IMG/VR virus record: IMGVR_UViG_3300042302_000394
Span: 124,001 to 188,000 of that record
Strand: one strand, 5' to 3'
Length of the DNA: 64,000 nt
Part shown: positions 828 to 64,000 of the stretch, piece by piece
Position numbering within the stretch: the stretch's first letter is position 1
How the letters are laid out: the number at the start of each line of letters is the position of its first letter
The notes under the pieces: generated by a model
What the model saw: only the letters and a program-made list of their open reading frames with translations
What the model was told of the DNA's origin: nothing
The model's database searches: none
Program-made: the position numbers and the translations under genes

Positions 828-1367
828 TTATTTATTGTTCAAGTTGTCAATGTTTAATTTACCCAAACTTTCTAGGTAGATGATTAACTTTTGTTGCTCA
901 TCTGACGACATATCTTGATAAAGATCAATGATAGTGGCTCTGCGTTCTTTATCCGAATTAGTATTTCCTCTATTTTCATTCAGACGCCTGCATCGGATAC
1001 GTAGATTTCCTGGAACATCCTTGCCGCCGAGACTTTTTGGAACAATATGGTCTAGATTAGGAACATGCAGATAATCTGAGGTAATCAAATTTTTGCCCTT
1101 GCCCCAATCGTAATAATATTCATTTACTCCGTCAGTCCATTTTATTGAATTCTCTTTATGATCTTCAATAAATTGATCTGCTTGCTCTCTAGTCCATTTA
1201 TATTCTTTTGCGTAATAACCGTAGACTGCTAGTTTAAAAAGAATAAACGGGTCGTCATGGTTATCACATACATAGTCATAAAGCTCGCCTGTAAAATAGG
1301 TACCTTCTTCACGCCCAGTAAAGAGGGACCTATTAGTTATAGCCTTGTTGATATCAATGTGGTTCAT
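828..1367 (-). CDS. HNH endonuclease-domain protein
   Basis: LDHIVPKSLGG...NLRIRCRRLNENRGN HNH motif. Confidence 0.8.
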   Translation of the reverse strand: MNHIDINKAITNRSLFTGREEGTYFTGELYDYVCDNHDDPFILFKLAVYGYYAKEYKWTREQADQFIEDHKENSIKWTDGVNEYYYDWGKGKNLITSDYLHVPNLDHIVPKSLGGKDVPGNLRIRCRRLNENRGNTNSDKERRATIIDLYQDMSSDEQQKLIIYLESLGKLNIDNLNNK

Positions 1368-3223: not shown

Positions 3224-3453
3224 TACATTTTTTTAGGTAGTTCGTTATCGCGTAGTTTCTTTTGCCAACGAGATTTAGCTGCGCCTTTTTTTCGCTTTCT
3301 TTCGGTAGTTGGTTTTTCGTAAAACATTTTAGATCGGAGTGTTTCTAGTACTCCACTATCTTCTACCTTTTGTTTGAATTTTCTTAATGCCACATTTAAT
3401 GGCAAGTCGCCAACGATAACTTTATTACCGACTGCTTTATTTTGTTTGCTCAT
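3220..3453 (-). CDS. rpsU: 30S ribosomal protein bS21
   Basis: ALRKFKQKV...GVLETLRSKMFYEKPTTERKRKK signature; start overlaps clpX end. Confidence 0.9.
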   Translation of the reverse strand: MSKQNKAVGNKVIVGDLPLNVALRKFKQKVEDSGVLETLRSKMFYEKPTTERKRKKGAAKSRWQKKLRDNELPKKMY

Positions 3454-4666
3454 TTTTCTTTTTATCAAAAATCATTATGGCAGGTTTGCCATCAATCGTA
3501 TCTTTACTTATGCGAATAGCTGTTAAACCTCGAGCAACTAAGTCAACTGCATCAAATTGATATGGCAGCAATGTTTTTTCGATGATGTTTTTAAGTCCCC
3601 TAGCATTAGTTTTGAGATCTTTGGCTTTACGGGCAATTTCTTTTAGAGCTTGAATTTCAAATTCTAATTTAATACCATCTAACTCAAACATATACTGATA
3701 TTGTTTAACTGGGCTATTTTTAGTTTCAGTAAGGATATTGACTAGTTGATCCTCTGACAATTCGTCTACATTAGTAATAAGCCCAAATCGTCCTACAAAC
3801 TCGGGAATAAGACCGTATTTGATAAGATCTTTTGTACTGATGTCTTGTAGAACACTTGCGTCTTCGTCGATGTTGTCTACATTTGCATGGAATCCGACTG
3901 ACTTTGCACCCTTACGCTGTTTAATGATTTTGTCCAAGCCTACAAATGCTCCACCGCATATAAACAATATACCCCTAGTGTCAATTTCCTGCATATCACT
4001 TCCGGGATGTTTTCGTTTACCAGTCGATGGCACTCGCATAATCGATCCCTCGATCATTTTCAACAAGGCCTGTTGTACACCTTCTCCACTAACATCTCGG
4101 CTAATACTAACATTTTCGCCCTTCTTGGAAATTTTATCAATTTCGTCAATGTAGACAATGCCACGAGCCGCTTTATCAAGATCACCATCTGCTTCGTTGA
4201 TTAATCTTGTTAAAATGCTCTCAACATCATCACCGACATAACCTGCTTCTGTAATACCTGTGGCATCACATATGGCAAAAGGTAATTCTAAATATTGTGC
4301 AATTTTACGTGCCATCATGGTCTTACCGCAGCCCGTGGGTCCTAACAATAACACGTTGGTTTTCTCGAGCTCAATATCTTTACTAGGATTATTGATGCGT
4401 TTGTAATGCTGACTAACTGCAACACTAAGGCTAATTTTAGCATCATCCTGTCCTATAACGTACTCGTCAAGATAGTCTTTGATAGCAACAGGATTTAGAA
4501 GTTTAGAAGGTTCAGCAACTTTTTCTTTTTTGTCTTTTAGTATATCGACACAAAGGTCTACGCACTCGTTACAAATAGCCGCATGTTCACCTACGATCAG
4601 TTTCTCGACATCTTCTTTGCTCTTTCCGCAGAAGTCACAAGAGTGATCACTTTCTGTTTTGTTCAT
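3437..4666 (-). CDS. clpX: ATP-dependent Clp protease ATP-binding subunit ClpX
   Basis: C4 zinc finger, GPTGCGKT Walker A, GYVG pore loop, IVYIDEIDK Walker B, RDVSGEGVQQALLK, RKH loop, VGF (IGF-like) loop. Confidence 0.95.
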   Translation of the reverse strand: MNKTESDHSCDFCGKSKEDVEKLIVGEHAAICNECVDLCVDILKDKKEKVAEPSKLLNPVAIKDYLDEYVIGQDDAKISLSVAVSQHYKRINNPSKDIELEKTNVLLLGPTGCGKTMMARKIAQYLELPFAICDATGITEAGYVGDDVESILTRLINEADGDLDKAARGIVYIDEIDKISKKGENVSISRDVSGEGVQQALLKMIEGSIMRVPSTGKRKHPGSDMQEIDTRGILFICGGAFVGLDKIIKQRKGAKSVGFHANVDNIDEDASVLQDISTKDLIKYGLIPEFVGRFGLITNVDELSEDQLVNILTETKNSPVKQYQYMFELDGIKLEFEIQALKEIARKAKDLKTNARGLKNIIEKTLLPYQFDAVDLVARGLTAIRISKDTIDGKPAIMIFDKKKNEQTK

Positions 4667-7056: not shown

Positions 7057-7130
7057 AGAACCTCCTAATGTGTATGTCTATGCACTACTATACAACAAAA
7101 CTGGTTTTATTGCAACCGAAAATTTTACCA

Positions 7131-7152
7131 AAAGAAAAGCACCCGAAGGTGC
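7131..7152 (-). terminator. intrinsic terminator after pstS
   Basis: GCACC-TTCG-GGTGC followed by TTTTCTTTT. Confidence 0.75.
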
Positions 7153-7199
7153 CAGTGCTGACTACTTATCACATTATACGCCGTCAGCCGGCGAGTATC

Positions 7200-8204
7200 T
7201 TATTTGATCTGTGTCCAAACACGTTCACGGATCTGCTTTGTCAAGCTGTCAGGCAATGCCACATAGTCTAGGTCGGCAGCATCTTTCTTACCATTCTTGA
7301 ATGCCCAATCAAAGAACTTTAATACTTCGTCACTAGTAGCTTTGTTAGCAGGAGTTTTGTACATGATGATAAAACTTGCTGAACTCACTGGCCATGCATT
7401 GGGATTCTTTTGATCCACGATGCTAAGTCCCATACCTGGAACACTGAACCAATCAGCACCATCTGCTGCGGCAGCAAATGTCAAGTCGTCCGGGCTTACA
7501 TACTTGCCACTCTTGTTTTGTAGTTGCAGGAATGTCATGTTGTTTTTCTTAACATAAGCATACTCTACATAACCAATTGAACCTTTGATTCTGTTCACAT
7601 TGGCAGCAACACCTTCATTGCCCTTGCCACCTACTGAAGTGGCTGCTGGCCACTTGACTGCGGCGCCACGACCCACACGTTGTAGCCACTCAGGGCTTAC
7701 TGTGGCCAAGTAATCGGTCCAGTTGAATGTTGTACCTGAACCATCAGCACGATGAACAATGGTGATGTTCTCGTTAGGTAGGTTCTTGCCTGGATTTAAT
7801 GCAGCCAGTTTAGGGTCATTCCACTTGGTGATGTTGCCCATAAACACTTCAGCCATAACTGGACCAGTGATGCGTAGTTCTCCGGGTTTGAATCCGTCTA
7901 AGTTTACCACAGGAACTGTGCCGCCAATGATAGCAGGAAATTGAACCTGTCCGTTCTTGTCCAAGTTCTCACCGCTTACCGGAGCATCTGTTGCACCAAA
8001 GTCAACGGTCTTTGCATTGATTTGACGAATGCCACCCGAACTTCCGATGCTTTGATAGTTCATGCCTGTACCTGTGGCTTTTTTGTAGCCTTCAGCCCAC
8101 TTGGCATAGATTGGGAATGGGAAGGTAGCTCCGGCACCTGTAATGTCTGCGGCTTGTGCTGACACTGCTACGGCTGCAAATAGAATAGCAAATAATTTTT
8201 TCAC
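7200..8204 (-). CDS. pstS: phosphate ABC transporter substrate-binding protein PstS
   Basis: Signal peptide, GAGATFP, YQSIGSSGG, VDFGATD, HRADGSGTT; start moved to GTG 8204 with AAGGAG SD. Confidence 0.95.
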   Translation of the reverse strand: MKKLFAILFAAVAVSAQAADITGAGATFPFPIYAKWAEGYKKATGTGMNYQSIGSSGGIRQINAKTVDFGATDAPVSGENLDKNGQVQFPAIIGGTVPVVNLDGFKPGELRITGPVMAEVFMGNITKWNDPKLAALNPGKNLPNENITIVHRADGSGTTFNWTDYLATVSPEWLQRVGRGAAVKWPAATSVGGKGNEGVAANVNRIKGSIGYVEYAYVKKNNMTFLQLQNKSGKYVSPDDLTFAAAADGADWFSVPGMGLSIVDQKNPNAWPVSSASFIIMYKTPANKATSDEVLKFFDWAFKNGKKDAADLDYVALPDSLTKQIRERVWTQIK

Positions 8205-8250
8205 TGTAAGTCTCCTTGTGTTTGTGATATTAATATTTAAACACAAAACG

Positions 8251-8268
8251 ATTACAATATGATTACAA
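8251..8268 (-). promoter_or_regulatory. putative Pho box
   Basis: TTGTAAT-N4-TTGTAAT direct repeat with 11-bp period upstream of pstS. Confidence 0.6.
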
Positions 8269-8286
8269 TTTTAAGAAATTTTTGCC

Positions 8287-8312
8287 AAAAAGAAACCCGC
8301 CGAAGCGGGTTC
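8287..8312 (-). terminator. intrinsic terminator after tmRNA
   Basis: GAACCCGC-TTCG-GCGGGTTTC followed by T-run. Confidence 0.85.
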
Positions 8313-8731
8313 TGCTATTTTGGGTGACAAGGTATAACTACCTCGTGGAGATCACGCTGCTAGGCGGTCTTCTCCAAAGTATGCATCGTTTGCATTTAGG
8401 TTTTTTGCTTCTGCGACCGGGTCACCCCAATCCTAACGGCTTCTACATTGCCGGACTGTCCATTTCAATACTCTTGACCCAATCGATCCTGTGTCAGGCC
8501 CATTATAAAACATACTCACCCGAATGGACATTGTCACCTCCGCCTACTGTCGGAAATATGTTTTATGGTGGACCTGGCGGGCACTGCCCCCGCGTCTTGA
8601 ATCCTTTTCTGTCTACTTCATACAGTCTTAACTTTTAACAGACTTCCCAGGGTGTGTTTGGCCTCTGCTAAGCCTGCAGGAATCTCACCTACTGCATATC
8701 TGCTACGCAAACTTGCCCCTGCGAAAGTCTA
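8313..8731 (-). ncRNA. ssrA: circularly permuted (two-piece) tmRNA; tag (A)ANDAYFGEDRLAA at 8352-8393
   Basis: T-arm, CAGGUCC-A-CCA end (8593-8566) upstream of 5' GGGCCUG (8501); G3-U70 alanine pair; P2 pairings; tag ORF ending LAA. Confidence 0.92.
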
Positions 8732-8737
8732 TTATTT

Positions 8738-8767
8738 ATTATACAACAGGATTGCCTTGACTGTCAA
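8738..8767 (-). promoter_or_regulatory. sigma70-type promoter TTGACA-18-TATAAT for tmRNA
   Basis: Consensus hexamers immediately upstream of the tmRNA precursor. Confidence 0.75.
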
Positions 8768-9230
8768 GTTCCATCCAAGTATGATCACCCATATATTTTA
8801 CGTGAGCAATATATTCATAATCTTCAGGAGCACTACTTGACCATCCATCCGGTCCCTGAAACACTAACAATGTTTTTGATTTCCTCTTGTCCCAAGTTAA
8901 CCAGTATGATTGTCCTAGCACAGGGCTGAATTGATATTCAGCGGCATGTACTGCGTCAGTTATTTCTAACCGTCGTTTGATCTGCTGGGCTTGTGTTTCA
9001 AGTACAGATACTAACTGCATAATCCGATCATATTCTTGCTGGGCATATATCCTAGCATGGTTGATCATGATATCTTTTTGCTTAGTTACGGGAACTAGGT
9101 CAAATTTGATACCGCCTGCTTCTGTGGGATATTCACTGACGTTTCTATTGAAGAACGGAATTAACGAACCAGTAGATGTAGAATCATAACTGGTTCTTCC
9201 TTTGGCAAGATTTGAACGTTCATCAGCCAA
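8739..9230 (-). CDS. DUF2452-like protein
   Basis: YPTEAGGIKFDLVPV...QEYDRIMQLVSVL...FSPVLGQSYWL pattern, recalled family resemblance. Confidence 0.65.
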   Translation of the reverse strand: MADERSNLAKGRTSYDSTSTGSLIPFFNRNVSEYPTEAGGIKFDLVPVTKQKDIMINHARIYAQQEYDRIMQLVSVLETQAQQIKRRLEITDAVHAAEYQFSPVLGQSYWLTWDKRKSKTLLVFQGPDGWSSSAPEDYEYIAHVKYMGDHTWMELDSQGNPVV

Positions 9231-9369
9231 TTCGGGTCCAGTTTAACACGTTACCTGAACCGTACTGTGCTTCTGCAAGCATCTTGGCCTGCAGGTCATC
9301 GTTAGCATTTACGCGAACGTGTGCGGTTTGATATGCGTTAAGTCGGATCCAAACTTCGTATGTGTACAT
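9223..9369 (-). CDS. small hypothetical protein (48 aa)
   Basis: ATG 9369 directly after csp stop; end overlaps next gene start. Confidence 0.6.
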   Translation of the reverse strand: MYTYEVWIRLNAYQTAHVRVNANDDLQAKMLAEAQYGSGNVLNWTRIG

Positions 9370-9370
9370 T

Positions 9371-9580
9371 TTAAACTTTCTTAGTTGATCGAATATTTTG
9401 AGCTTGCTTACCTTTGTCACCTTCAGTTAGATCAAATTCTACTTCTTGTCCAACTGCCAGTGTCTTATATCCTTCCATTTGGATTTGACTAAAGTGTGCA
9501 AACACATCATCAGTTGTACCATCTGGAACGATAAATCCAAAACCTTTTGAATTATTAAACCATTTAACTTTTCCCTGCAT
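9371..9580 (-). CDS. cold-shock domain protein
   Basis: GKVKWFN..KGFGFI (RNP1), DVFAHFS (RNP2). Confidence 0.95.
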
Positions 9581-9600
9581 ACTGCTTCCTACTTGTTTAT

Positions 9601-9629
9601 ATTATACTGTGATTTTACCAGTTTGTCAA
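9601..9629 (-). promoter_or_regulatory. sigma70-type promoter TTGACA-17-TATAAT
   Basis: Perfect consensus upstream of the cold-shock gene. Confidence 0.8.
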
Positions 9630-9633
9630 CCGA

Positions 9634-10461
9634 TTATTTGGTAATTCTCCAGCAACTTACCCAACTTGGATTACTTGCCGCTGTACCACCCGGGTATGAA
9701 ATTGTAACATCGCCATCATTTGGATTATTACTTGCTTTTGGACTTTGATTCCCGCCAACAAAAGTAAACTTTCCATTGTTAGCCGTGTAGACAAAGTTTA
9801 CGTGCCTATAACTCCAAAATGCAATATCACCTGGCTGTGCTTGATCTTTAGGTACCTGCACTGCACCCCAACGTTCGGGTGTGGTTGTTATTGCGGCTGC
9901 ACTTGCAGTCTGGACATATTTGTATCCTGAACACTTTAATCCAAAGTTTATGAAACCCATGCACCATGCAGTTTGATCACTGACCCACGGTCCTGAATTA
10001 GGGTATCCTAGATTGGACCATATACCTGTAATATTTTTATTACTAACGCCTCCGGCCTGACCAGTTTCTCTCCACATACCTCGACCTGCTTCTTCCATAG
10101 TGCGTTGCAAGAACGGAACGATATCGGATGCTGAAGTCGATGTGCTAACTGTACCTGTATTGAATGTTTGGTCTTCAATAGGTGCGTAATTTCCTTTTAC
10201 TCCGTCAACTGCTGCCTCTGGAGTATAATATTGATTTTGTCCGGAAGGGTTTGCTATCTGCGCCGCAACAAGATCGTTTGTCTGAGTTGCAATAGCAACT
10301 TCTACATCAGGCGGAATTGTTATTGCACTAGATGCACTTACACCTGCAAAGGCAGAACTGCCCCCGGGTGCAAGCCACAAGGCGACAGGAACATTGTTTA
10401 CATACACATTTCCGCTGCGATATACATCGCTAATTCTACCACCACCAGGAATATAAGGCAT
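9634..10461 (-). CDS. virion-associated peptidoglycan hydrolase, CHAP/NlpC-like (TIGR02594-like)
   Basis: DQTAWCMGF (catalytic Cys), HVNFV (His), GGNQS. Confidence 0.65.
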   Translation of the reverse strand: MPYIPGGGRISDVYRSGNVYVNNVPVALWLAPGGSSAFAGVSASSAITIPPDVEVAIATQTNDLVAAQIANPSGQNQYYTPEAAVDGVKGNYAPIEDQTFNTGTVSTSTSASDIVPFLQRTMEEAGRGMWRETGQAGGVSNKNITGIWSNLGYPNSGPWVSDQTAWCMGFINFGLKCSGYKYVQTASAAAITTTPERWGAVQVPKDQAQPGDIAFWSYRHVNFVYTANNGKFTFVGGNQSPKASNNPNDGDVTISYPGGTAASNPSWVSCWRITK

Positions 10462-11409: not shown

Positions 11410-11842
11410 CTTTCTTCTCAGGTATCTCGCACAGTGCTTCTAGAGTTTTATAATGCTGGTATGCTTTCTGGAGTGCCTCAAAGTGCTCTAACTTGGCCGG
11501 ATCCGGAGTTAGGATAGCCAGTCTCTTTTCAATAGTAGTTAACAGTTCTCCAAGGCTTCGGCCCTTCCATTTAATGTCGCCATCAAACTTAGCATCGCTA
11601 GTAACGTGTAGCCCTGCGTGTGACATGCTTGCTACGCTGGAATTAGCAGTTGTAAAAACATAAGGGTTAGTTGCCCATGTTCCGTTACCCCCTGCTCCAG
11701 TAGATACATAATAAGATCCCGAAGCTCCTGTTGCACCAGTTGATGAAAAAGAGTAGTTCATCGTATTGCTAATGTCTATTGACATGGTATTGTCGAGTGG
11801 ATCATCTAAAGAGATGGATAGTTCATCATCACTATTAGCCAT
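11396..11842 (-). CDS. hypothetical protein
   Basis: 148-aa ORF overlapping both neighbours. Confidence 0.7.
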   Translation of the reverse strand: MANSDDELSISLDDPLDNTMSIDISNTMNYSFSSTGATGASGSYYVSTGAGGNGTWATNPYVFTTANSSVASMSHAGLHVTSDAKFDGDIKWKGRSLGELLTTIEKRLAILTPDPAKLEHFEALQKAYQHYKTLEALCEIPEKKDDGS

Positions 11843-12059
11843 TTAGTTTTGCCTTTAGTTCGGTGAAGCCGCCAACTAGCTCCCCATCTAAAAAGATTTG
11901 GGGAACTGCTCTAGCTGTTGGTACAGCTTCTAATAATTCTTCTTTGGTATAACCATCACCTATTTTCTTTTCTTCAAAGGCAATGCCTTTCTGTTTTAGT
12001 AATGCCTTTGCTTGATCGCAGTAGGGGCAATGGTACTTAGACCACACAATCGCTTTCAT
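11835..12059 (-). CDS. glutaredoxin
   Basis: CPYC active site, VPQIF, VGGF. Confidence 0.93.
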   Translation of the reverse strand: MKAIVWSKYHCPYCDQAKALLKQKGIAFEEKKIGDGYTKEELLEAVPTARAVPQIFLDGELVGGFTELKAKLNG

Positions 12060-12084: not shown

Positions 12085-12411
12085 TCATACTCTAAAACTT
12101 TCACCGCATCCACATCGGTCACGTTCGTTAGGATTCTTAAATTCAAATCCTTCATTAAGTCCGTTGCGTACCCAGTGTACTTCCAATCCATTAACATACG
12201 GATAAGATTTTCCATCTACCCAAACTTTAACACCGTTGCTTTCGTAGACAAATTGATCGCGAGTTACTGGAACATGATCTACAAATTCTAACGTATAAGC
12301 CAAGCCAGAACACCCTGTGGTTTTTACACCGATACGTATCCCTAGCCCTTTGCCTCTTCGTTCTAGATGTTTCTTAACTTTAGCGGCAGCTTGTTCCATT
12401 AATGTTATCAT
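12085..12411 (-). CDS. iscA: iron-sulfur cluster assembly protein IscA
   Basis: GCSGLAY, CGCGESF. Confidence 0.92.
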
Positions 12412-12786
12412 TTAATGTTTTTTACGATAATCTTCAACAGCAGCTTTAATAGCATCTTCAGCCAATATACTGCAATGTATCTTAACGGGCGGTAGTGCTA
12501 ATTCTTCAGCAATCTGGCTATTACGAATGTTACTAGCATCATCCACATGCATTCCTTTAACCATCTCAGTGACAAGACTGGAGCTGGCGATTGCTGAACC
12601 ACATCCATATGTCTTGAAACGAGCATCTCTAATAATACCATTTTCATCTACCTTTATCTGTAATTTCATTACGTCACCGCAAGCAGGTGCACCGACCATG
12701 CCTGTACCTACAGTGTCGTCTATTTCAAACTTACCTACATTACGAGGGTTTTCGTAATGGTCAATTACTTTATTTGAGTATGCCAT
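12412..12786 (-). CDS. iscU: Fe-S cluster scaffold IscU
   Basis: MAYSNKVIDHYENPRNVG, PACGDVM, YGCGSAIASSS, LPPVKIHCS; start moved to 12786. Confidence 0.95.
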   Translation of the reverse strand: MAYSNKVIDHYENPRNVGKFEIDDTVGTGMVGAPACGDVMKLQIKVDENGIIRDARFKTYGCGSAIASSSLVTEMVKGMHVDDASNIRNSQIAEELALPPVKIHCSILAEDAIKAAVEDYRKKH

Positions 12787-12790
12787 AGTT

Positions 12791-13891
12791 TTATAAATCC
12801 GGTAATTCGTCGTAACTAACTGCATCACTCATAACACCGATGACATAGTTAGTACTTTCGTTTTCTTGCAAGGCGGTCTGTTTCTTATTGATATTAACGT
12901 GTTTGTTGAACCAAGGGATAGGACTAAACTTAGGATGCTCTCCTTGATACTTAATACCAATTTCCTTTAAACGCACAAACGCAGTGTAGTCAACAAAGTC
13001 AGACAGGATAGTAGCATTAAGGCCAATAACTGGTCCTAGCTTGAACAAATAATCTGCCCACTCTTTTTCTTCTCGGATGACATCCATATAGAGGGTATAG
13101 ACTTCTTCTGCACATTCTTCTTCAAGTTTTACAAAGTCTGTATCATCTTTAGTCACGTTGTTGATCAGCCAGGCAGTCCATTCTGTATGTAACAACTCAT
13201 CTTGTAGAATCAAACTGATGATGTTACCGTTGCCAATATAGATCTTATTCTCTACCATTGCTAGACTTGTGGCAAAACTTACCATGAAGCGTAGAGCCTC
13301 CAATGCATATGATGCGTGTAAGGCCAACCATATGGCTCGCTTATGAGTATGGAGTTCAATTTCCTCGCCCAACTCTTTACGACAGTTGAGCTGATGAAGA
13401 TCCTCATAGTAGCGACCAATGTTAGCAGCCATGCCAACAATTTCAGCCGTGTCGTGAATCTTGTTAAATTCTTCTTTAGGTACGCCATAGACATTACGAA
13501 TAATGTGACTGTAAGATTTTGAGTGAATATTTGTTTCAAAGAAACTCCAATTGCTTACTAATGCTTCTAGTTCAGGAATACTGATAACAGGTTGAAATAC
13601 TTGATTAGGTGCGCGACCTTGAATACTATCTAATGCTGTCTGACGCAGTAAGTTACTAGTAAAAATATGCTTAACTGCATCACTTGCATCCTTGTGATCC
13701 ATCTTGTCTTTAGTAAGACTGATCTCTTCTGGGACCCAAAAGAATCCACGAGCAAGTTCTTCGTACTTGGTAATCTTAGGGTACTTGACTTCTTCAAAGC
13801 GTTGCACAGTAACTGGACCAGCTGGATCCAGAAACATTGTACGTTTTAGATAGTTTGTTTGTTTTGATAGATTGTATTGTTCTTTGCTCAT
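12791..13891 (-). CDS. nrdB: ribonucleotide reductase class Ia beta subunit
   Basis: FFWVPEEISL, ETNIHSKSY, EALRFMVSF, DELLH, QENESTNY. Confidence 0.95.
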   Translation of the reverse strand: MSKEQYNLSKQTNYLKRTMFLDPAGPVTVQRFEEVKYPKITKYEELARGFFWVPEEISLTKDKMDHKDASDAVKHIFTSNLLRQTALDSIQGRAPNQVFQPVISIPELEALVSNWSFFETNIHSKSYSHIIRNVYGVPKEEFNKIHDTAEIVGMAANIGRYYEDLHQLNCRKELGEEIELHTHKRAIWLALHASYALEALRFMVSFATSLAMVENKIYIGNGNIISLILQDELLHTEWTAWLINNVTKDDTDFVKLEEECAEEVYTLYMDVIREEKEWADYLFKLGPVIGLNATILSDFVDYTAFVRLKEIGIKYQGEHPKFSPIPWFNKHVNINKKQTALQENESTNYVIGVMSDAVSYDELPDL

Positions 13892-55049: not shown

Positions 55050-55562
55050 ATGAGTTCGACATTATTGTTAAATGCAGACGGAGCCCCGATTTCTTGGCTA
55101 CCGTTGAGCACAATTTCCTGGGAAGAATCTATTAAGTTCATAGTGCTTGAAAAAGCCACTGTGTTAGATGTCTACGATAATTGGGTCGTGCATAGTGCAA
55201 ACTGGGAAACACAGGTTCCTGCCGTTATGATTCTTCGCGAGTACGAAAAGCGCAAGACTGCAATTCGTTATTCCAAACATAATGTGTTCCTTCGTGATGG
55301 CTATACATGCCAGTACTGTGGGGATGATGTAAGCCGTAAAACAGCCACGTTAGACCACGTGCTGCCAGTTAGTCACGGTGGTAAGACTACCTTTGAAAAC
55401 ACTGTCTGCGCCTGCGCGAGCTGTAATGCAAACAAGGGTAACGACAAGAAGATTGTGCCAAAGCACAAGCCAGTTAAGCCCACCTACTATCAATTAGTAG
55501 ACAAGCGTAGACAGCAAAAGTGGGATATACCACACCCATCGTGGGCCAACTACTTAGGATAA
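55050..55562 (+). CDS. HNH endonuclease (McrA-like)
   Basis: RDGYTCQYCG...TLDHVLPVSHGG...NTVCACASCNANKG. Confidence 0.9.
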   Translation: MSSTLLLNADGAPISWLPLSTISWEESIKFIVLEKATVLDVYDNWVVHSANWETQVPAVMILREYEKRKTAIRYSKHNVFLRDGYTCQYCGDDVSRKTATLDHVLPVSHGGKTTFENTVCACASCNANKGNDKKIVPKHKPVKPTYYQLVDKRRQQKWDIPHPSWANYLG

Positions 55563-57438: not shown

Positions 57439-57762
57439 TTAAATGGAGAAGCTACTGCCGCAGCCGCAAGTGGATTGAGCGTTTGGATTTTTTATTGAAA
57501 AGCTAGATCCGGAAAGATCTTCTTTGTAATCAATTTCGGCACCTTGTAGATACTGCATACTCATAGCATCTACTACGACTTTAAATTCACCAATTGGAAA
57601 TTGGAAATCATCTTCGTTAAATTCTTCATCAAAGGTAAATCCGTAACTAAATCCAGAACAGCCGCCACCTTGTACAAAGGTTCTTAAGGCAAGTTTTGGA
57701 TTATTTTCCTCCATTAGGAGGTCTGTAATCTTTGTCTTAGCATTTGATGTTATGTTGATCAT
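57439..57762 (-). CDS. A-type Fe-S carrier (ErpA/IscA family)
   Basis: [17 protein letters not shown]; start moved to ATG 57762, 5 nt after TAAATA. Confidence 0.9.
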
Positions 57763-57767
57763 ACTAC

Positions 57768-57784
57768 TATTTACACTATAAATA
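57768..57784. promoter_or_regulatory. back-to-back late-type boxes TAAATA (-) and TATAAATA (+)
   Basis: 57768-57773 on minus strand, 57777-57784 on plus strand. Confidence 0.6.
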
Positions 57785-57802
57785 TCCAAGCAGGAGAAAA
57801 AC

Positions 57803-57967
57803 ATGGAACAATACATGGATGACTTTCAAAACTACAAACGATTTACAGCTAAATGCAAATGCGGATGTCCTGCACACTGCAATCATAGTTGTACTGAATG
57901 CGAATACTGCCCGGACTGCGAATGTCCAGAGTGCATAGAATTAGATAATAGCAGAGGGTACAATTAA
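57803..57967 (+). CDS. Cys-rich metallothionein-like micro-protein (54 aa)
   Basis: CAGGAG SD; [27 protein letters not shown]; TAATG coupling to next gene; not in ORF track. Confidence 0.75.
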
Positions 57968-60251: not shown

Positions 60252-62216
60252 ATGCCTGATAGATCTATACAATTACTAACTGATGTTTTTCCAAATTCAA
60301 CTACAAATCATGGTAATTTGAACAATCCCGATATAATACTAGTCCAGGCACCTGGATGGGGAGTGCAAACAGCTCCGCTTTCTTTAGCATCACTTTCAGC
60401 CTATGTTCGGCAGAAAGGATACAAGATTTTACCATTAGATTTAAATGTTGAATTTTTTGCTATTAGACCTGAGAAATTTTCCATAATGTGGGACATAGAT
60501 CAATCTCAGTGGTTTTGGGAATCTAAAGACTGCGTTAATGACCTGTTAACCGAATACAAAAAAGAAATTGATGACTTTGTCGAGTTAGTGGTGTCGACTA
60601 ATACACCATTAGTTGGATTTAGTTTATACAACACTTCAATGCATACTTCGATGCATCTTATCAAACTGCTCAAAGCACGTAAGCCTGAGCTAAAGATTAT
60701 TGTCGGTGGTCCTCATGCCCACCGATATCTAGCTGGTAATGTTTTGGCAAAAAATCCGTTAATAGATGCAGTCGCCCAGGCTGAGGGAGAAGAAACATTA
60801 GTAGACATAATTGAGCGTGTTCGAAAAAATCAATCATTGCTCGATTGCCCTGGATTGTTAGTGTTTAAAGACGGAGCAGTACATGCTACTCCAACAAGGC
60901 CAATGATTCCAAAAATCGACACTCTTCCGATACCCCACTACAGTGATTTTTCATTAGCTCCTTACCTATCCCCAACACGATTACCAATGGCGTCTAGTCG
61001 AGGGTGTCCTAATAAATGTATATTCTGTAATGAGCAACCTTATTGGGAATCATATCGATTTCGGTCTGCAGAAAGCATGATTGAAGAAGTTAAGTACCAA
61101 TTAAAATTATATCCTGAAATTGACTTTATTGACTTTCAAGATAGTTTATGTAACGGGAAGATAAGCGCAATTGAAAAGTTTGCCGAATACCTCATTGAAA
61201 ATAAAATTAAAATACAATGGGCCGGACAGGCAGTTATTAGAAAAGAAATGACCGAAGAACTGATGATAAAATTAAAACAGTCCGGATGTGTGGTCATGGC
61301 CTACGGATTAGAAACTCCAAACCCTACACTTATGAGGAGTGTAGGAAAGTTATTATCAAAAGGTGCCGATATTGATAAAATTGCTGAATCTCATGCAAGG
61401 ACCGGACTTAATGCAGTTTACAATGTCATGTTTGGGTTACCGGGAGAAACTGAAGAAGATTCATTAATGGTCTTAGAGTTTTTAAGACGTAATTCAAAAA
61501 ATAAATTATATGTAAATCCCAGTGCAGCATTTTGCGGATTTGCTAACGGAACTCCTGGATGGGAGAACGCAGAAAAATTCGGTATTGACAAAACACTCGG
61601 CGGAACTTTTTGGAAAAGTGTAGATGGTAATAACACATTCCTAGTTCGATTAAAAAGATTTGAAGATTTTTGTCGATTAGTTTCCGACTTAGGTATAAAA
61701 ACCACTTATCCGTCGACATATCTTCTCAATAGAAATCAAGTCATTGCCCAATATTATATTGCAATAGGTCAACCAGAAAAAGCAATATACTATTACACAG
61801 AATGGGTTAAAGATCATCCCGAAGATCAAATAGCTAAAAAGTTTTTATTCGAATATTCAGGTTTCTTAAAAAGTACCCCAAGTTCAAATGTTTATGCAAT
61901 TAGCCGGCATTCGGATGAGAATTGGTTAAATGGTGTTGCTAGAAATTGGGGGCCTGCAATATTATTTTCACATGTTCCTTACATTTTAGAAGAATTAACA
62001 GTTGGTAAAATTGTACAGTTTTCAGATCTTCAAACAAGAAAAATAATTAGAGTTGAAGATAATTTTGAAAATGATTGTATTGTAATACACCTCGACGGCA
62101 CTCATTTAGATGGAGATCAAGTTGGTTGGCCAAAACTAATAACTGTTTTAGAGGAGCCTAGCAAAGTTATCCCTATTAAGATAGTTAATTACACAGAAAT
62201 AGATTTTAAAAAATGA
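60252..62216 (+). CDS. cobalamin-binding radical SAM enzyme
   Basis: VGFSLY..IIVGGPHA B12-binding domain; SRGCPNKCIFC CxxxCxxC; YGLET; TPR-like C-terminal segment. Confidence 0.88.
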   Translation: MPDRSIQLLTDVFPNSTTNHGNLNNPDIILVQAPGWGVQTAPLSLASLSAYVRQKGYKILPLDLNVEFFAIRPEKFSIMWDIDQSQWFWESKDCVNDLLTEYKKEIDDFVELVVSTNTPLVGFSLYNTSMHTSMHLIKLLKARKPELKIIVGGPHAHRYLAGNVLAKNPLIDAVAQAEGEETLVDIIERVRKNQSLLDCPGLLVFKDGAVHATPTRPMIPKIDTLPIPHYSDFSLAPYLSPTRLPMASSRGCPNKCIFCNEQPYWESYRFRSAESMIEEVKYQLKLYPEIDFIDFQDSLCNGKISAIEKFAEYLIENKIKIQWAGQAVIRKEMTEELMIKLKQSGCVVMAYGLETPNPTLMRSVGKLLSKGADIDKIAESHARTGLNAVYNVMFGLPGETEEDSLMVLEFLRRNSKNKLYVNPSAAFCGFANGTPGWENAEKFGIDKTLGGTFWKSVDGNNTFLVRLKRFEDFCRLVSDLGIKTTYPSTYLLNRNQVIAQYYIAIGQPEKAIYYYTEWVKDHPEDQIAKKFLFEYSGFLKSTPSSNVYAISRHSDENWLNGVARNWGPAILFSHVPYILEELTVGKIVQFSDLQTRKIIRVEDNFENDCIVIHLDGTHLDGDQVGWPKLITVLEEPSKVIPIKIVNYTEIDFKK

Positions 62217-62995
62217 AAAGTTTTTTAAATCAATATAATGTTATATCTGAAGATATACCAGGGTCCTTACAATTTCCCAGTGCATTAGTATGGGACTCGT
62301 TATTAGGTTATCAAACCGAAAATAAAGTTGTGCGTAATTTTTTAGAAATAGGTGTATTACATGGAAAGTCTGCAATGCTAAGTGGGCTATATGCACAGGC
62401 CAACAACACACAGCAGGTGATTGTAGATCCCGGTGAATGGATGGACACAACTTATTCAAATTTACTATCAAAGATTGAGGGATTAAATCTAAGATTAATA
62501 AATGATTATTCTAACAGTTTGGTGCATTTTCATTATTCTATTTTTCAAGAACATTCTCGCGATTATTCATGGTTTCATATTGATGGCGATCATAGTTATG
62601 CACAATGCTATAAAGATTTAATTTTAGCTGATCATTTTTTGTCTGACTATGGAGTTGTTATTGTTGATGATTTCTTTTCAACCATGTTTCCTCAGGTTAC
62701 AGCTAGCACTTTTTCATATTTAGAAAAACATCCATTAAATTTAAAAATGTTTTTAGTTGGTCAATGTAATAAAGCATATCTATGCAGACCGCCAGCATTT
62801 GATTTTTATAAAACGTTTTGCATAGATGTATTATCTAAAGATATGAAAGACCGAAAATATCCTGTAACTATAACTAAAACAACTTATCCTCAGGATTTTG
62901 ATTGTTACGGGTATCAACCCATAGGATGGACTGATGACAGAATGGAGTTTCGTGGTCCGGACTGGGATAGAACTAATTTTATAAAATATACCTAA
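62213..62995 (+). CDS. class I SAM-dependent methyltransferase (Methyltransf_24-like)
   Basis: FLEIGVLHGKS, FHIDGDHSY, VIVDDF. Confidence 0.82.
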   Translation: MKSFLNQYNVISEDIPGSLQFPSALVWDSLLGYQTENKVVRNFLEIGVLHGKSAMLSGLYAQANNTQQVIVDPGEWMDTTYSNLLSKIEGLNLRLINDYSNSLVHFHYSIFQEHSRDYSWFHIDGDHSYAQCYKDLILADHFLSDYGVVIVDDFFSTMFPQVTASTFSYLEKHPLNLKMFLVGQCNKAYLCRPPAFDFYKTFCIDVLSKDMKDRKYPVTITKTTYPQDFDCYGYQPIGWTDDRMEFRGPDWDRTNFIKYT

Positions 62996-62998
62996 CAG

Positions 62999-64000
62999 TT
63001 AATTTTTCCACCACGGCAAATATTTTTCTGTATTGTGATTTCGATAAGCATCCATCTTTTTTATTATCGAAACACTGTTTTTAAAATTTATATCTGACTC
63101 AGGTGTTCCGATTAAAAATGTAATCATTGCACTCAATATGTTAGCCTTTTCTTTAACTGCATCTTTTTCAAGTAGTTCTCTATTGTTTTCAAACCAGGTT
63201 GCAATTTCTTGATACACTGTATTTTTATAAGCTGTTGGTAAATTACTCGGGGATGCATAGCTTGGATCGTAGATATAATTTATGTGAGGAAAGTTTAAAA
63301 TATTCTTTCCTTCCAACCTCACAATATAATCTAACAATTCTGTAAATTTATGTGTATTAAAAATAGAAAACACAGTGTGAAACTCGATACCAATATTTTC
63401 GTTTTCATTCGAATATTGAACTATGCTATCAATATTATCTTTAACAATGTTCCATTTTCCAGGATATCTAATATATTCGTACATATCAGCAACAGCATCA
63501 ATACTTACTTTAATAGTCATAGTCTTAAAATGGCTCCAGATGTCAAACCATTTTGACGGTGTCACAGTTAAATTTGTATGTATAGATAAGTCAACCTGTT
63601 TAGATAAACCTGAACTAATTAGTTCTTTACAAAATGTATAAAAATCGTTGTTGATTAATGGTTCACCACCGGTTACTAATATCTGCACTAATCCGTCAGT
63701 CTTTACTAGGTCAAGGATATGTTTAATTTGATCATAGTTCCATTGAGCTTTATAATCACTTTCTTTTTCACCCCATGGTTTAATGTTGAGGAATTTAAAT
63801 TCTTTTATTAGTTGATCGCTAGCTCCCGGGGTACACATCTTGCATTGTAGATTACACTTATTCGACCAACTTAAATCTAAGTAATTTACATCAACAGATT
63901 CTAACTTGCCCGTATGCATTTCAGTGTTTGTTATAATATCTTCAATCGGCCATCTCTTTACAAACCAATTTCTAACACTTTCACCCCCATTGTCCTCAAC
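62999..64000 (-). CDS. radical SAM protein, partial (5' end beyond window)
   Basis: KCNLQCKMC, TGGEPL; frame stays open from 63919 to 64000. Confidence 0.85.
   Translation of the reverse strand, partial: VEDNGGESVRNWFVKRWPIEDIITNTEMHTGKLESVDVNYLDLSWSNKCNLQCKMCTPGASDQLIKEFKFLNIKPWGEKESDYKAQWNYDQIKHILDLVKTDGLVQILVTGGEPLINNDFYTFCKELISSGLSKQVDLSIHTNLTVTPSKWFDIWSHFKTMTIKVSIDAVADMYEYIRYPGKWNIVKDNIDSIVQYSNENENIGIEFHTVFSIFNTHKFTELLDYIVRLEGKNILNFPHINYIYDPSYASPSNLPTAYKNTVYQEIATWFENNRELLEKDAVKEKANILSAMITFLIGTPESDINFKNSVSIIKKMDAYRNHNTEKYLPWWKN

What the first reader, a model, noticed from the sequence alone, without database searches (positions are those of the whole stretch)
8287..8767. Phage-encoded circularly permuted (two-piece) tmRNA
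Seen (minus strand, 5' to 3'): TTGACA-18-TATAAT promoter; acceptor piece ending GCGGG-GGCAGUG-CCCGC-CAGGUCC-A-CCA (8593-8566); 64-nt intervening segment closed by a 10-bp inverted repeat (8505-8514/8557-8566); coding piece starting GGGCCUG (8501). This gives a 7-bp acceptor stem with the G3-U70 AlaRS determinant and A73. Inter-piece helices are UUGGGUC/GAUUCAA and ACAGUC/GACUGU. The tag frame ANDAYFGEDRLAA* (8393-8352) is followed by a terminator. Established: permuted tmRNAs are known from alphaproteobacteria, some cyanobacteria and a small betaproteobacterial lineage. From memory, the non-canonical GGCAGU T-loop resembles the alphaproteobacterial form. Inference: a stand-alone permuted ssrA in a phage is unusual. 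The roughly 165-nt acceptor piece carries an extra stem-closed domain (AGACUUUC/GGGAAGUCU) and may be a distinct permutation.
Basis: partly seen in the sequence, partly recalled or inferred. Interest (0 to 1): 0.9.

Follow-up and report, generated by a model that had tools for sequence, protein, structure and literature searches.

The report
Phage two-piece tmRNA behind leader RNA
An uncultivated T4-like phage carries a complete split ("two-piece") ribosome-rescue RNA gene, a kind already reported in aquatic phages; the "extra domain" in front of it is a separate, apparently undescribed structured leader RNA that related phages place before many different genes.

Summary
The locus is a circularly permuted tmRNA gene: Rfam tmRNA_permuted scores 101.9 bits against a cut-off of 47 (E 1e-18), and alpha_tmRNA scores 55.5 against 50. 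The window is phage DNA: T4-like tail and baseplate genes, nrdAB and PstS, with identical copies in IMG/VR. Seventy-three distinct relatives in IMG/VR show compensatory changes in the acceptor stem, T-arm and both inter-piece helices. G3-U70 is invariant, and there are 26 different tags of one AND...AA-type family. So the gene is real and under selection.

Two parts of the interpretation fail. First, phage two-piece tmRNAs are not new: 53 were reported among isolate phages in 2022. Second, the "extra stem-closed domain" is not part of a new permutation. It is an independent leader RNA of about 95 nt, a four-way junction plus a pseudoknot. I found 46 distinct copies with strong covariation and no Rfam match. 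It sits right after promoters and before varied cargo genes or the tmRNA.

ARAGORN at default settings misses this tmRNA. A full ClpX gene lies 3.7 kb away, and no SmpB or ClpP was found in the window. The tmRNA is a new member of a known kind. The leader RNA is the novel item.

The parts
8733..8767 (-). Promoter: -35 TTGACA (8767-8762), 18-nt spacer, -10 TATAAT (8743-8738). It overlaps a T4-late-like TAAATA (8738-8733).
   Evidence: reading. One search scores it 12/12. TAAATA lies within 9 nt upstream of the leader in 39 of 46 distinct relatives.
8635..8730 (-). Leader RNA motif: four-way junction (P1 plus three hairpins) with a pseudoknot between the third hairpin loop (GCAGA) and the 3' tail (UCUGU). 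It is independent of the tmRNA.
   Evidence: Model R1 scores 107.7 bits here, and this is the only copy in the window. Of 26 modelled pairs, 20 show compensatory changes and 95.6% of cells are paired. The pseudoknot is 100% paired with 3 of 5 pairs compensatory. There are 46 distinct copies and no Rfam hit.
8566..8627 (-). tmRNA acceptor piece: 5' strands of the inter-piece helices (8627-8622, 8603-8597), T-arm (8593-8577), acceptor 3' strand (8576-8570), A73 (8569), encoded CCA (8568-8566).
   Evidence: RF04321 alignment. Covariation across 73 distinct relatives.
8502..8565 (-). Intervening segment, presumably removed during maturation. It forms a long hairpin closed by the 10-bp inverted repeat 8566-8557 / 8514-8505.
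   Evidence: Its length ranges from 23 to 382 nt among relatives, and it is only 42% identical to L127 while the flanks are 86-98% identical.
8290..8501 (-). tmRNA coding piece: acceptor 5' strand GGGCCUG (8501-8495), D-loop analogue, 3' strands of the inter-piece helices (8482-8476, 8459-8454), tag frame, 3' stem-loops and terminator.
   Evidence: RF04321 and RF01850 alignments. Covariation.
8352..8393 (-). Tag reading frame ANDAYFGEDRLAA plus stop. The resume codon is GCA.
   Evidence: ARAGORN -ps reports the same tag. Relatives carry 25 further tag variants of the same family.
8287..8312 (-). Intrinsic terminator: 8-bp stem, 4-nt loop, then a T-run.
   Evidence: It aligns to the terminator hairpin of RF01850.
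3437..4666 (-). Phage-encoded ClpX, a possible partner that would recognise and unfold tagged proteins. It has the Zn finger, GYVG pore loop and RKH loop, with VGF in place of IGF.
   Evidence: Pfam zf-C4_ClpX plus AAA_2. E 4e-123 to solved ClpX structures, with the residue alignment shown. The functional link to the tmRNA is inferred only.

Best explanation
The locus is a functional, phage-borne, circularly permuted ssrA gene.

Transcription is inferred to start at about 8731-8726, from a promoter that reads both as sigma-70 type and as T4-late type. The transcript first makes a leader RNA of about 95 nt (a four-way junction with a pseudoknot), then the acceptor piece, a 64-nt spacer hairpin, the coding piece and a terminator.

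Host tRNA-processing enzymes are inferred to do the maturation. RNase P would cut 5' of G8501, and 3' trimming would stop at the encoded CCA at 8566. This excises the spacer. The two RNAs stay joined by the 7-bp acceptor stem and two inter-piece helices. The leader is probably cut away from the acceptor piece.

Host AlaRS would charge the RNA through G3-U70 and A73. Host SmpB and EF-Tu would deliver it to stalled ribosomes. Translation would resume at GCA and append ANDAYFGEDRLAA. The tagged products would go to ClpXP, for which the phage supplies its own ClpX.

Shown: the gene anatomy, the model scores, covariation and tag conservation, the phage context, and the independence of the leader. 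Inferred: processing, charging, tagging, proteolysis, and the benefit to the phage (keeping ribosomes free, or recycling host protein, during infection).
For: - Model scores: RF04321 101.9 bits against a cut-off of 47, and alpha_tmRNA 55.5 against 50. The beta model aligns over its full length, including the 3' CCUUGUCACCCAAAA loop and the terminator.
- Conservation: in 73 distinct IMG/VR relatives G3-U70 is present in 73 of 73. Compensatory changes occur in the acceptor stem, T-arm, and the helices labelled P2a and P2c (the 7-bp and 6-bp inter-piece helices). There are 26 distinct tags, nearly all starting AND and most ending LAA or MAA.
- Expression signals: a perfect promoter and an intrinsic terminator.
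- Phage context: tail-fibre and baseplate genes, nrdAB, PstS. There are 100% identical stretches in IMG/VR contigs, including one of 207,813 nt.
- Partner: a full ClpX with the RKH loop, which in my recollection contributes to ssrA-tag recognition by proteobacterial ClpX.
- Leader independence.
- Precedent: Melnitz and 53 isolate phages with two-piece tmRNA (PMC9004378); tmRNA and SmpB in huge phages (PMC7162821).
Against: - No experiment of any kind supports function.
- ARAGORN at default settings rejects the gene.
- The beta model is below its cut-off (59 against 84), and the alpha model matches only positions 40-240 of 355.
- I could not resolve the pseudoknot upstream of the resume codon.
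- No smpB or clpP is in the window, so function depends on host factors of an unknown host.
- This T-arm variant matched no tmRNA in 185,579 bacterial and archaeal species genomes, so there is no sign of a host-like origin.
- Whether the leader is removed from the acceptor piece is unknown.
Confidence: 0.82

Rival explanations
1. One reading: the 5' stem-closed domain is an integral part of an acceptor piece of about 165 nt, so this would be a structurally distinct permutation of tmRNA.
For: In the window and in four other distinct variants (L206, L016, L085, L127), the domain abuts the tmRNA. Only about 8 nt separate it from the first inter-piece helix, and the spacing to the T-arm is the same (41 nt) in the four variants the script could measure. 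No promoter lies between them. If nothing cuts there, the primary acceptor piece would carry the domain.
Against: - The same domain occurs in 46 distinct forms. Most are followed by protein genes, with the tmRNA 0.4-1.1 kb away or absent.
- The Rfam permuted model begins after the domain, at 8627.
- The window and L127 share a 98.5% identical promoter and leader but only 72-75% identical tmRNA.
- In L098 the acceptor piece follows ORFs with no visible promoter of its own, so its 5' end must be made by cleavage.
Confidence: 0.1
2. The RNA is a decoy or a decaying relic. It would bind SmpB or ribosomes and inhibit host trans-translation rather than tag proteins, or it would have no function. The TLD-only tmRNA of mycobacteriophage DS6A (TLD = tRNA-like domain) is the precedent.
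For: The T-loop is non-canonical and ARAGORN scores it below threshold. A TLD-only phage tmRNA that inhibits tmRNA has been described (PMC4131195, PMC11915505). The window has no phage smpB.
Against: - The gene is complete, with an open tag frame.
- The tag peptide family is conserved over 26 variants while the nucleotides change, and the stop codon is retained.
- The T-loop and D-loop match those of the alphaproteobacterial model consensus. From memory, the Caulobacter two-piece tmRNA of that lineage is functional.
- Covariation in all helices argues for selection on the whole fold.
Confidence: 0.06
3. The sequence is bacterial rather than phage: a host ssrA on a mis-assigned contig, or an attachment-site fragment carried by a prophage.
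For: Prophages often integrate into ssrA and carry fragments of it (PMC4383910, PMC9004378).
Against: - Both halves of the gene are present with their own promoter and terminator.
- The neighbours for 64 kb are phage structural and replication-related genes, nearly all on one strand, and none of the ORFs I scanned matched an integrase.
- Identical DNA is present in many IMG/VR viral contigs.
- No bacterial species genome holds a tmRNA with this T-arm.
Confidence: 0.02

Closest known systems
Two-piece tmRNA genes of aquatic myophages: Methylophilales phage Melnitz, pelagimyophages such as Mosig, and some cyanophages (Buchholz et al. 2022, PMC9004378)
   Same: A complete circularly permuted ssrA in a lytic T4-like phage, placed behind an early promoter. 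A structured RNA element is associated with the gene. No smpB is reported alongside. The proposed roles are the same: keeping the translation machinery working, or recycling host protein.
   Different: - There is no detectable nucleotide similarity to any of 50,697 isolate phage records beyond a T-arm match of about 32 nt.
- The associated RNA in Melnitz is a glutamine riboswitch (glnA motif). Here it is a different, unmatched four-way-junction and pseudoknot leader.
- ARAGORN, the tool used in that survey, misses this gene at default settings.
Alphaproteobacterial two-piece tmRNA (Rfam RF01849). The Caulobacter tmRNA is the experimentally studied example (from memory).
   Same: The permuted order is the same. 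The T-loop follows the pattern GGCRGUR and the D-loop analogue is AGGAUCGA. G3-U70, the encoded CCA and the score above the family cut-off (55.5 against 50) all agree.
   Different: Only model positions 40-240 of 355 align. The tag region and the 3' end do not fit the alpha model. This exact T-arm was not found in any tmRNA among 185,579 species genomes.
Betaproteobacterial two-piece tmRNA (Rfam RF01850)
   Same: The alignment is full length. The resume region UAAAUGCAAACGAUG, the 3' stem-loop with CCUUGUCACCCAAAA and the terminator all match. The tags of relatives (ANDEQFALAA, ANDSQFALAA) resemble the tag encoded by the model consensus. Some relatives, such as L127, also have the beta-like T-loop UUCGACU.
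   Different: The score of 59 is below the cut-off of 84. The T-loop and D-loop are of the alpha type. The window's tag is 13 residues (ANDAYFGEDRLAA), longer than the 10 of most relatives.
PeSL promoter/stem-loop cassettes of T4-type phages (PMC2839356, PMC4122927). This comparison is for the leader RNA only.
   Same: A short conserved promoter-plus-structure module is repeated in front of variable accessory genes of T4-like phages. It sits at the borders of swapped cassettes. Here the leader is 98.5% conserved while the tmRNA behind it is exchanged.
   Different: PeSLs are described as simple terminator/promoter composites. This element is an RNA of about 95 nt with four helices and a covarying pseudoknot, and its junction nucleotides are highly conserved. 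That points to a function at the RNA level. I made no sequence comparison with PeSLs.

Membership tests
tmRNA, permuted (two-piece) form (RF04321) | Covariance-model score above the curated cut-off | tested here: met
   101.9 bits against 47, E 1e-18, model positions 1-213 of 213.
tmRNA, permuted (two-piece) form (RF04321) | tRNA-like domain: a 7-bp acceptor stem formed between the 5' end of the coding piece and the 3' end of the acceptor piece, plus a 5-bp T-arm with a 7-nt loop | tested here: met
   Reading. In 73 distinct relatives 72-73 keep each pair, with compensatory changes at acceptor pairs 4-6 and T-arm pairs 1-2.
tmRNA, permuted (two-piece) form (RF04321) | AlaRS identity elements: G3-U70, discriminator A73, 3' CCA | tested here: met
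   G8499-U8572, A8569, CCA 8568-8566. G-U is present in 73 of 73 relatives. Charging itself was not tested.
tmRNA, permuted (two-piece) form (RF04321) | Permuted gene order: acceptor piece, then intervening segment, then coding piece, held together by inter-piece helices | tested here: met
   Order 8627-8566 / 8565-8502 / 8501-8290. The helices labelled P2a (7 bp) and P2c (6 bp) covary: AT to GC, CG to TA.
tmRNA, permuted (two-piece) form (RF04321) | Tag reading frame that starts at an alanine resume codon and ends in a hydrophobic ...AA degradation signal and a stop codon | tested here: met
   GCA...UGA 8393-8352, ANDAYFGEDRLAA*. There are 26 tag variants of the same family.
tmRNA, permuted (two-piece) form (RF04321) | Pseudoknot (PK1) upstream of the resume codon | tested here: inconclusive
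   The Rfam models place only a hairpin (CGGC...GCCG) there, and the window has a 20-nt insertion holding a GGG/CCC hairpin. My alifold run on the coding pieces was too gappy to decide.
tmRNA, permuted (two-piece) form (RF04321) | Maturation into two RNAs, SmpB binding, tagging activity | not testable with these tools
   This needs Northern blot or RACE, alanylation and reporter assays.
alpha_tmRNA (RF01849) | Score above the cut-off, with the alpha-type T-loop and D-loop | tested here: met
   55.5 against 50. GGCAGUG aligns to GGCgGUA and AGGAUCGA aligns to AGGAUCGA. Only model positions 40-240 of 355 are matched.
beta_tmRNA (RF01850) | Score above the cut-off | tested here: not met
   59 against 84, although the alignment is full length (1-331) and the 3' loop and terminator match.
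Any Rfam 15 family (riboswitches, ribozymes, leaders), tested for the 5' leader motif | Covariance-model match | tested here: not met
   Nothing over 8635-8730 at E up to 10. Nothing over the motif in eight other loci at E up to 0.1.
PeSL cassettes of T4-type phages, tested for the leader | Composite early promoter plus terminator-like stem-loop that flanks variable genes | not tested
   The comparison is by description only (PMC4122927). The position after a promoter and before variable genes is similar, but the structure is much more complex.

The most novel reading that the evidence does not exclude
The 95-nt element at 8730-8635 would be a new class of cis-acting phage RNA: a four-way junction locked by a pseudoknot and made as the first nucleotides of the transcript. 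Candidate roles are a ligand- or metal-sensing riboswitch, an element that acts on RNA polymerase (anti-termination, as put RNAs do), or a 5'-end stabiliser or processing signal. It would travel as a promoter-plus-leader cassette that phages attach to accessory cargo. That cargo is often small secreted His/Gly-rich proteins, and in this clade a phage-specific two-piece tmRNA with an alpha-type tRNA-like domain and a beta-type 3' half.
Probability: 0.5. Interest if true: 0.7.

Novelty: new member of a known kind. Interest (0 to 1): 0.42.

Why it matters
The tmRNA shows that split ribosome-rescue RNAs are common accessory genes of large uncultivated phages. They are swapped as cassettes, and the default ARAGORN settings that I ran miss this lineage, so published frequencies of phage tmRNA are probably underestimates. 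A phage ClpX next to the tmRNA suggests that the phage may run its own tag-and-degrade pathway.

The leader RNA matters more. It is a well-supported, unmatched structured RNA at the 5' end of many phage transcripts. It can be tested directly by reporter fusions and in-line probing, and it may reveal how these phages control accessory genes.

Tried and rejected
- **ARAGORN at default settings.** It found nothing in the window. This is a threshold effect, not evidence against a tmRNA: with -ps it finds the gene with the same tag.
- **Nucleotide searches of 50,697 isolate phage records.** There was no match at E 1e-5 and only T-arm matches of about 32 nt at E up to 1. No cultured relative could be named.
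- **Genome-contig scan for the T-arm variant.** It gave 24 hits, mostly high-GC coincidences. None is a tmRNA by BLAST or Rfam.
- **Glutamine riboswitch, as in Melnitz.** I considered it for the 5' domain. There is no glnA or any other Rfam hit.
- **First degenerate pattern for the leader.** The gap length was wrong, and the 12 hits were mostly unrelated. I corrected it.
- **alifold on the coding pieces to resolve PK1 and the stem-loops after the tag.** The alignment was too gappy to use.
- **Plus-strand ORF 8282-8638 (118 aa).** Rejected as a gene. It lies antisense inside the tmRNA, and relatives have indels of 23-382 nt in the spacer.
- **SmpB and ClpP.** They were not found in any scanned ORF of the window. 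The rest of the roughly 208-kb genome was not available.
- **Two founding papers on two-piece tmRNA (PMC16621, PMC516066).** They are not held in the library.

Full report
**1. The observation**

- Promoter: TTGACA (8767-8762), 18 nt, TATAAT (8743-8738).
- T-arm: GCGGG / GGCAGUG / CCCGC (8593-8577).
- CAGGUCC-A-CCA (8576-8566).
- A 64-nt spacer (8565-8502) closed by a perfect 10-bp inverted repeat.
- GGGCCUG (8501-8495), which pairs with CAGGUCC to give a 7-bp stem with G3-U70.
- The two inter-piece helices.
- The frame GCA...UGA (8393-8352), which encodes ANDAYFGEDRLAA.
- A terminator: stem 8312-8293 and a T-run.

The consensus scan rates the promoter 12/12 and lists the terminator.

**2. It is a permuted tmRNA**

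Rfam 15 gives tmRNA_permuted (RF04321) 101.9 bits against a cut-off of 47, E 1e-18, over the whole model. It gives alpha_tmRNA 55.5 against 50. In E-value mode the beta model aligns end to end (8681-8291) but scores 59, below its cut-off of 84.

The tRNA-like domain is of the alpha type. T-loop GGCAGUG aligns with GGCgGUA, and D-loop AGGAUCGA aligns with its alpha counterpart. The resume region, the 3' stem-loop (CCUUGUCACCCAAAA) and the terminator fit the beta model.

RF04321 was built in 2025 by merging the three lineage models and covers only the tRNA domain (PMC11915505).

ARAGORN finds nothing in the 64 kb at default settings. Run locally, it reports a permuted tmRNA with the same tag only with -ps. 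It does call the relatives L127 and L016 at default settings. L127 has the canonical UUCGACU T-loop, but L016 has the same GGCAGUG T-loop as the window, so the T-loop alone does not explain the miss.

**3. The DNA is phage**

Almost all long ORFs lie on the minus strand. PHROGs and Pfam find:
- collagen-like tail fibres, baseplate wedge proteins and virion structural proteins at about 20-21 kb and 29-55 kb;
- nrdA and nrdB;
- a PstS-like phosphate-binding protein directly downstream of the tmRNA;
- ClpX, NifU and IscA, a DNA ligase and HNH endonucleases.

A virion protein is 40-48% identical to proteins of cyanomyoviruses, phage DSL-LC04 and Puniceispirillum phage HMO-2011. No isolate phage matches at the nucleotide level.

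The 484 nt around the tmRNA are 100% identical to several IMG/VR contigs, one of them 207,813 nt long. The upstream ORF's exact protein is on record in 82 blocks of public assemblies. The host and the environment were not established.

**4. The gene is under selection**

An exact 26-nt T-arm and acceptor probe hit more than 120 IMG/VR contigs. Relatives of the upstream ORF number more than 590. From the loci I fetched I extracted 73 distinct tmRNAs. Across them:
- G3-U70 is present in 73 of 73.
- Acceptor pairs 4-6 and T-arm pairs 1-2 change on both sides.
- The 7-bp and 6-bp inter-piece helices show AT/GC and CG/TA exchanges, with 60-73 of 73 sequences paired at each position.
- There are 26 different tags, for example ANDSQFALAA, ANDEQFALAA, ANDSLYSMAA and ANDNYYTEELRLAA. 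Nearly all start with AND and most end in LAA or MAA. The window's 13-residue tag is unique among them.

The spacer varies from 23 to 382 nt, as expected for a segment that is discarded.

Two types of tRNA-like domain coexist: the alpha-like type of the window, and a beta-like type (UUCGACU with UGGUUUCGACA).

Compared with L127, the flanks are 86-98.5% identical, but the tmRNA is only 72-75% identical and the spacer 42%. This fits cassette exchange.

**5. The extra domain is a separate RNA**

The 5' domain (8730-8640) folds stably, at z = -4.5, but it is separable from the tmRNA. In L098 and L089 the same element follows a promoter and is itself followed by protein genes, and only then by the tmRNA.

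Two pattern scans of IMG/VR and a covariance model (R1) gave 46 distinct copies. The window holds one.

On 31 distinct sequences, 20 of 26 modelled pairs show compensatory changes and 95.6% of cells pair. Slid controls pair at 33-60%, and none of 500 shuffles reached the observed values.

A pseudoknot joins the loop of the third hairpin to the 3' tail. The model did not include it, yet it is paired in 100% of sequences, and 3 of its 5 pairs are compensatory, for example A-U in 22 sequences and G-C in 9.

No Rfam family matches the element.

In 39 of 46 copies a T4-late-like TAAATA lies within 9 nt upstream, and 8 copies have a sigma-70-type promoter. The window has both.

The downstream cargo is varied:
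- in about half the cases, a small secreted His/Gly-rich protein;
- otherwise a P-loop kinase-like ORF, a solute-binding protein, a methyltransferase-like ORF or tiny basic peptides;
- in five variants, the tmRNA directly.

In L098 the acceptor piece follows the stop codon of a small ORF, and I saw no promoter of its own there by reading. Its 5' end must therefore come from cleavage. By extension, the leader is probably removed in the window's phage as well. That last step is inference.

**6. Mechanism**

The gene's anatomy, conservation and context are shown. The rest is inferred from established tmRNA biology:
- RNase P and 3' trimming remove the spacer.
- Alanine is charged through G3-U70.
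- Host SmpB and EF-Tu deliver the RNA to the ribosome, since no smpB is in the window.
- Translation resumes at GCA.
- Tagged products are degraded by ClpXP.

The phage ClpX at 3437-4666 matches solved ClpX structures at E 4e-123. It keeps the zinc finger, the GYVG pore loop and the RKH loop, and has VGF at the ClpP-docking IGF position. A link between ClpX and the tag is plausible but untested.

**7. Comparison with what is known**

Phage tmRNAs have long been known in mycobacteriophages and Bacillus phage G (PMC4131195), and in huge phages together with SmpB (PMC7162821). Two-piece forms were described in the OM43 phage Melnitz. The same study counted 53 two-piece forms among 18,146 phage genomes, 50 of them from marine or aquatic phages, and permuted tmRNAs in 17 of 47 Melnitz-like contigs (PMC9004378). 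The 2025 tmRNA database lists 79 bacteriophage sequences and 11,946 permuted ones (PMC11915505).

The kind is therefore known. This lineage is new in four respects: it has no cultured relative, it mixes alpha and beta features, it was not found in bacterial species genomes, and ARAGORN misses it at default settings.

**8. Verdict**

The tmRNA reading is supported. The claims of rarity and of a distinct permutation are not supported. The tmRNA is a new member of a known kind and of moderate interest.

Noticed in passing
window 8635-8730 (-); relatives e.g. L089:1592-1673, L098:2221-2317, L012:11168-11261, L283:3195-3290: A conserved leader RNA of about 95 nt: a four-way junction plus a pseudoknot, at the very start of transcripts. 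There are 46 distinct copies with strong covariation and no Rfam match.
   Followed up: yes
relatives: L224, L207, L033, L045, L069, L012, L273 and others, just downstream of the leader motif: A recurrent family of small secreted proteins (about 100-120 aa): signal peptide, His-rich stretch, Gly-rich run, then a glycine-zipper-like hydrophobic segment. This is the commonest cargo behind the leader. It may hint at a metal-related function.
   Followed up: partly
window 3437-4666 (-): A full-length phage ClpX (Zn finger, GYVG, RKH loop, VGF in place of IGF), 3.7 kb downstream of the tmRNA. No ClpP or SmpB was found in the window.
   Followed up: partly
relatives L039, L021, L097, L049, L058 (spacer 339-382 nt); L016:8019-8139: The spacer between the two tmRNA pieces ranges from 23 to 382 nt. 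In L016 it holds a 37-aa hydrophobic ORF. A near-identical small ORF lies just upstream of the tmRNA in L098.
   Followed up: partly
window 7129-10461 compared with L127: Mosaic pattern: the promoter and leader are 98.5% identical and the neighbouring genes 86-95%, but the tmRNA is 72-75% identical and has a different T-loop type. This suggests exchange of the tmRNA cassette between related phages.
   Followed up: partly
window 12085-12828 (-), 57439-57816 (-), 11835-12059 (-): Fe-S cluster assembly genes (NifU-like, and two IscA-like Fe-S_biosyn proteins) and a glutaredoxin, next to nrdAB.
   Followed up: no
window 7200-8246 (-) and 9371-9580 (-): A PstS-like phosphate-binding protein directly downstream of the tmRNA terminator, and a cold-shock-domain protein upstream.
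   Followed up: no
window 9601-9629 (-): A second perfect TTGACA-17-TATAAT promoter, located after the stop of the 275-aa ORF (9634-10461) and upstream of the cold-shock-domain gene.
   Followed up: no
window 60252-63919: A B12-binding radical SAM protein, a methyltransferase and a second radical SAM protein at the low-GC end of the window. Two of them lie on the plus strand, unlike nearly all other genes.
   Followed up: no
window 1-64000: ARAGORN finds no tRNA gene in 64 kb of a large T4-like phage that nevertheless carries a tmRNA.
   Followed up: no
window 828-1367 (-) and 55050-55562 (+): Two HNH endonuclease-like ORFs, probably homing endonucleases.
   Followed up: no
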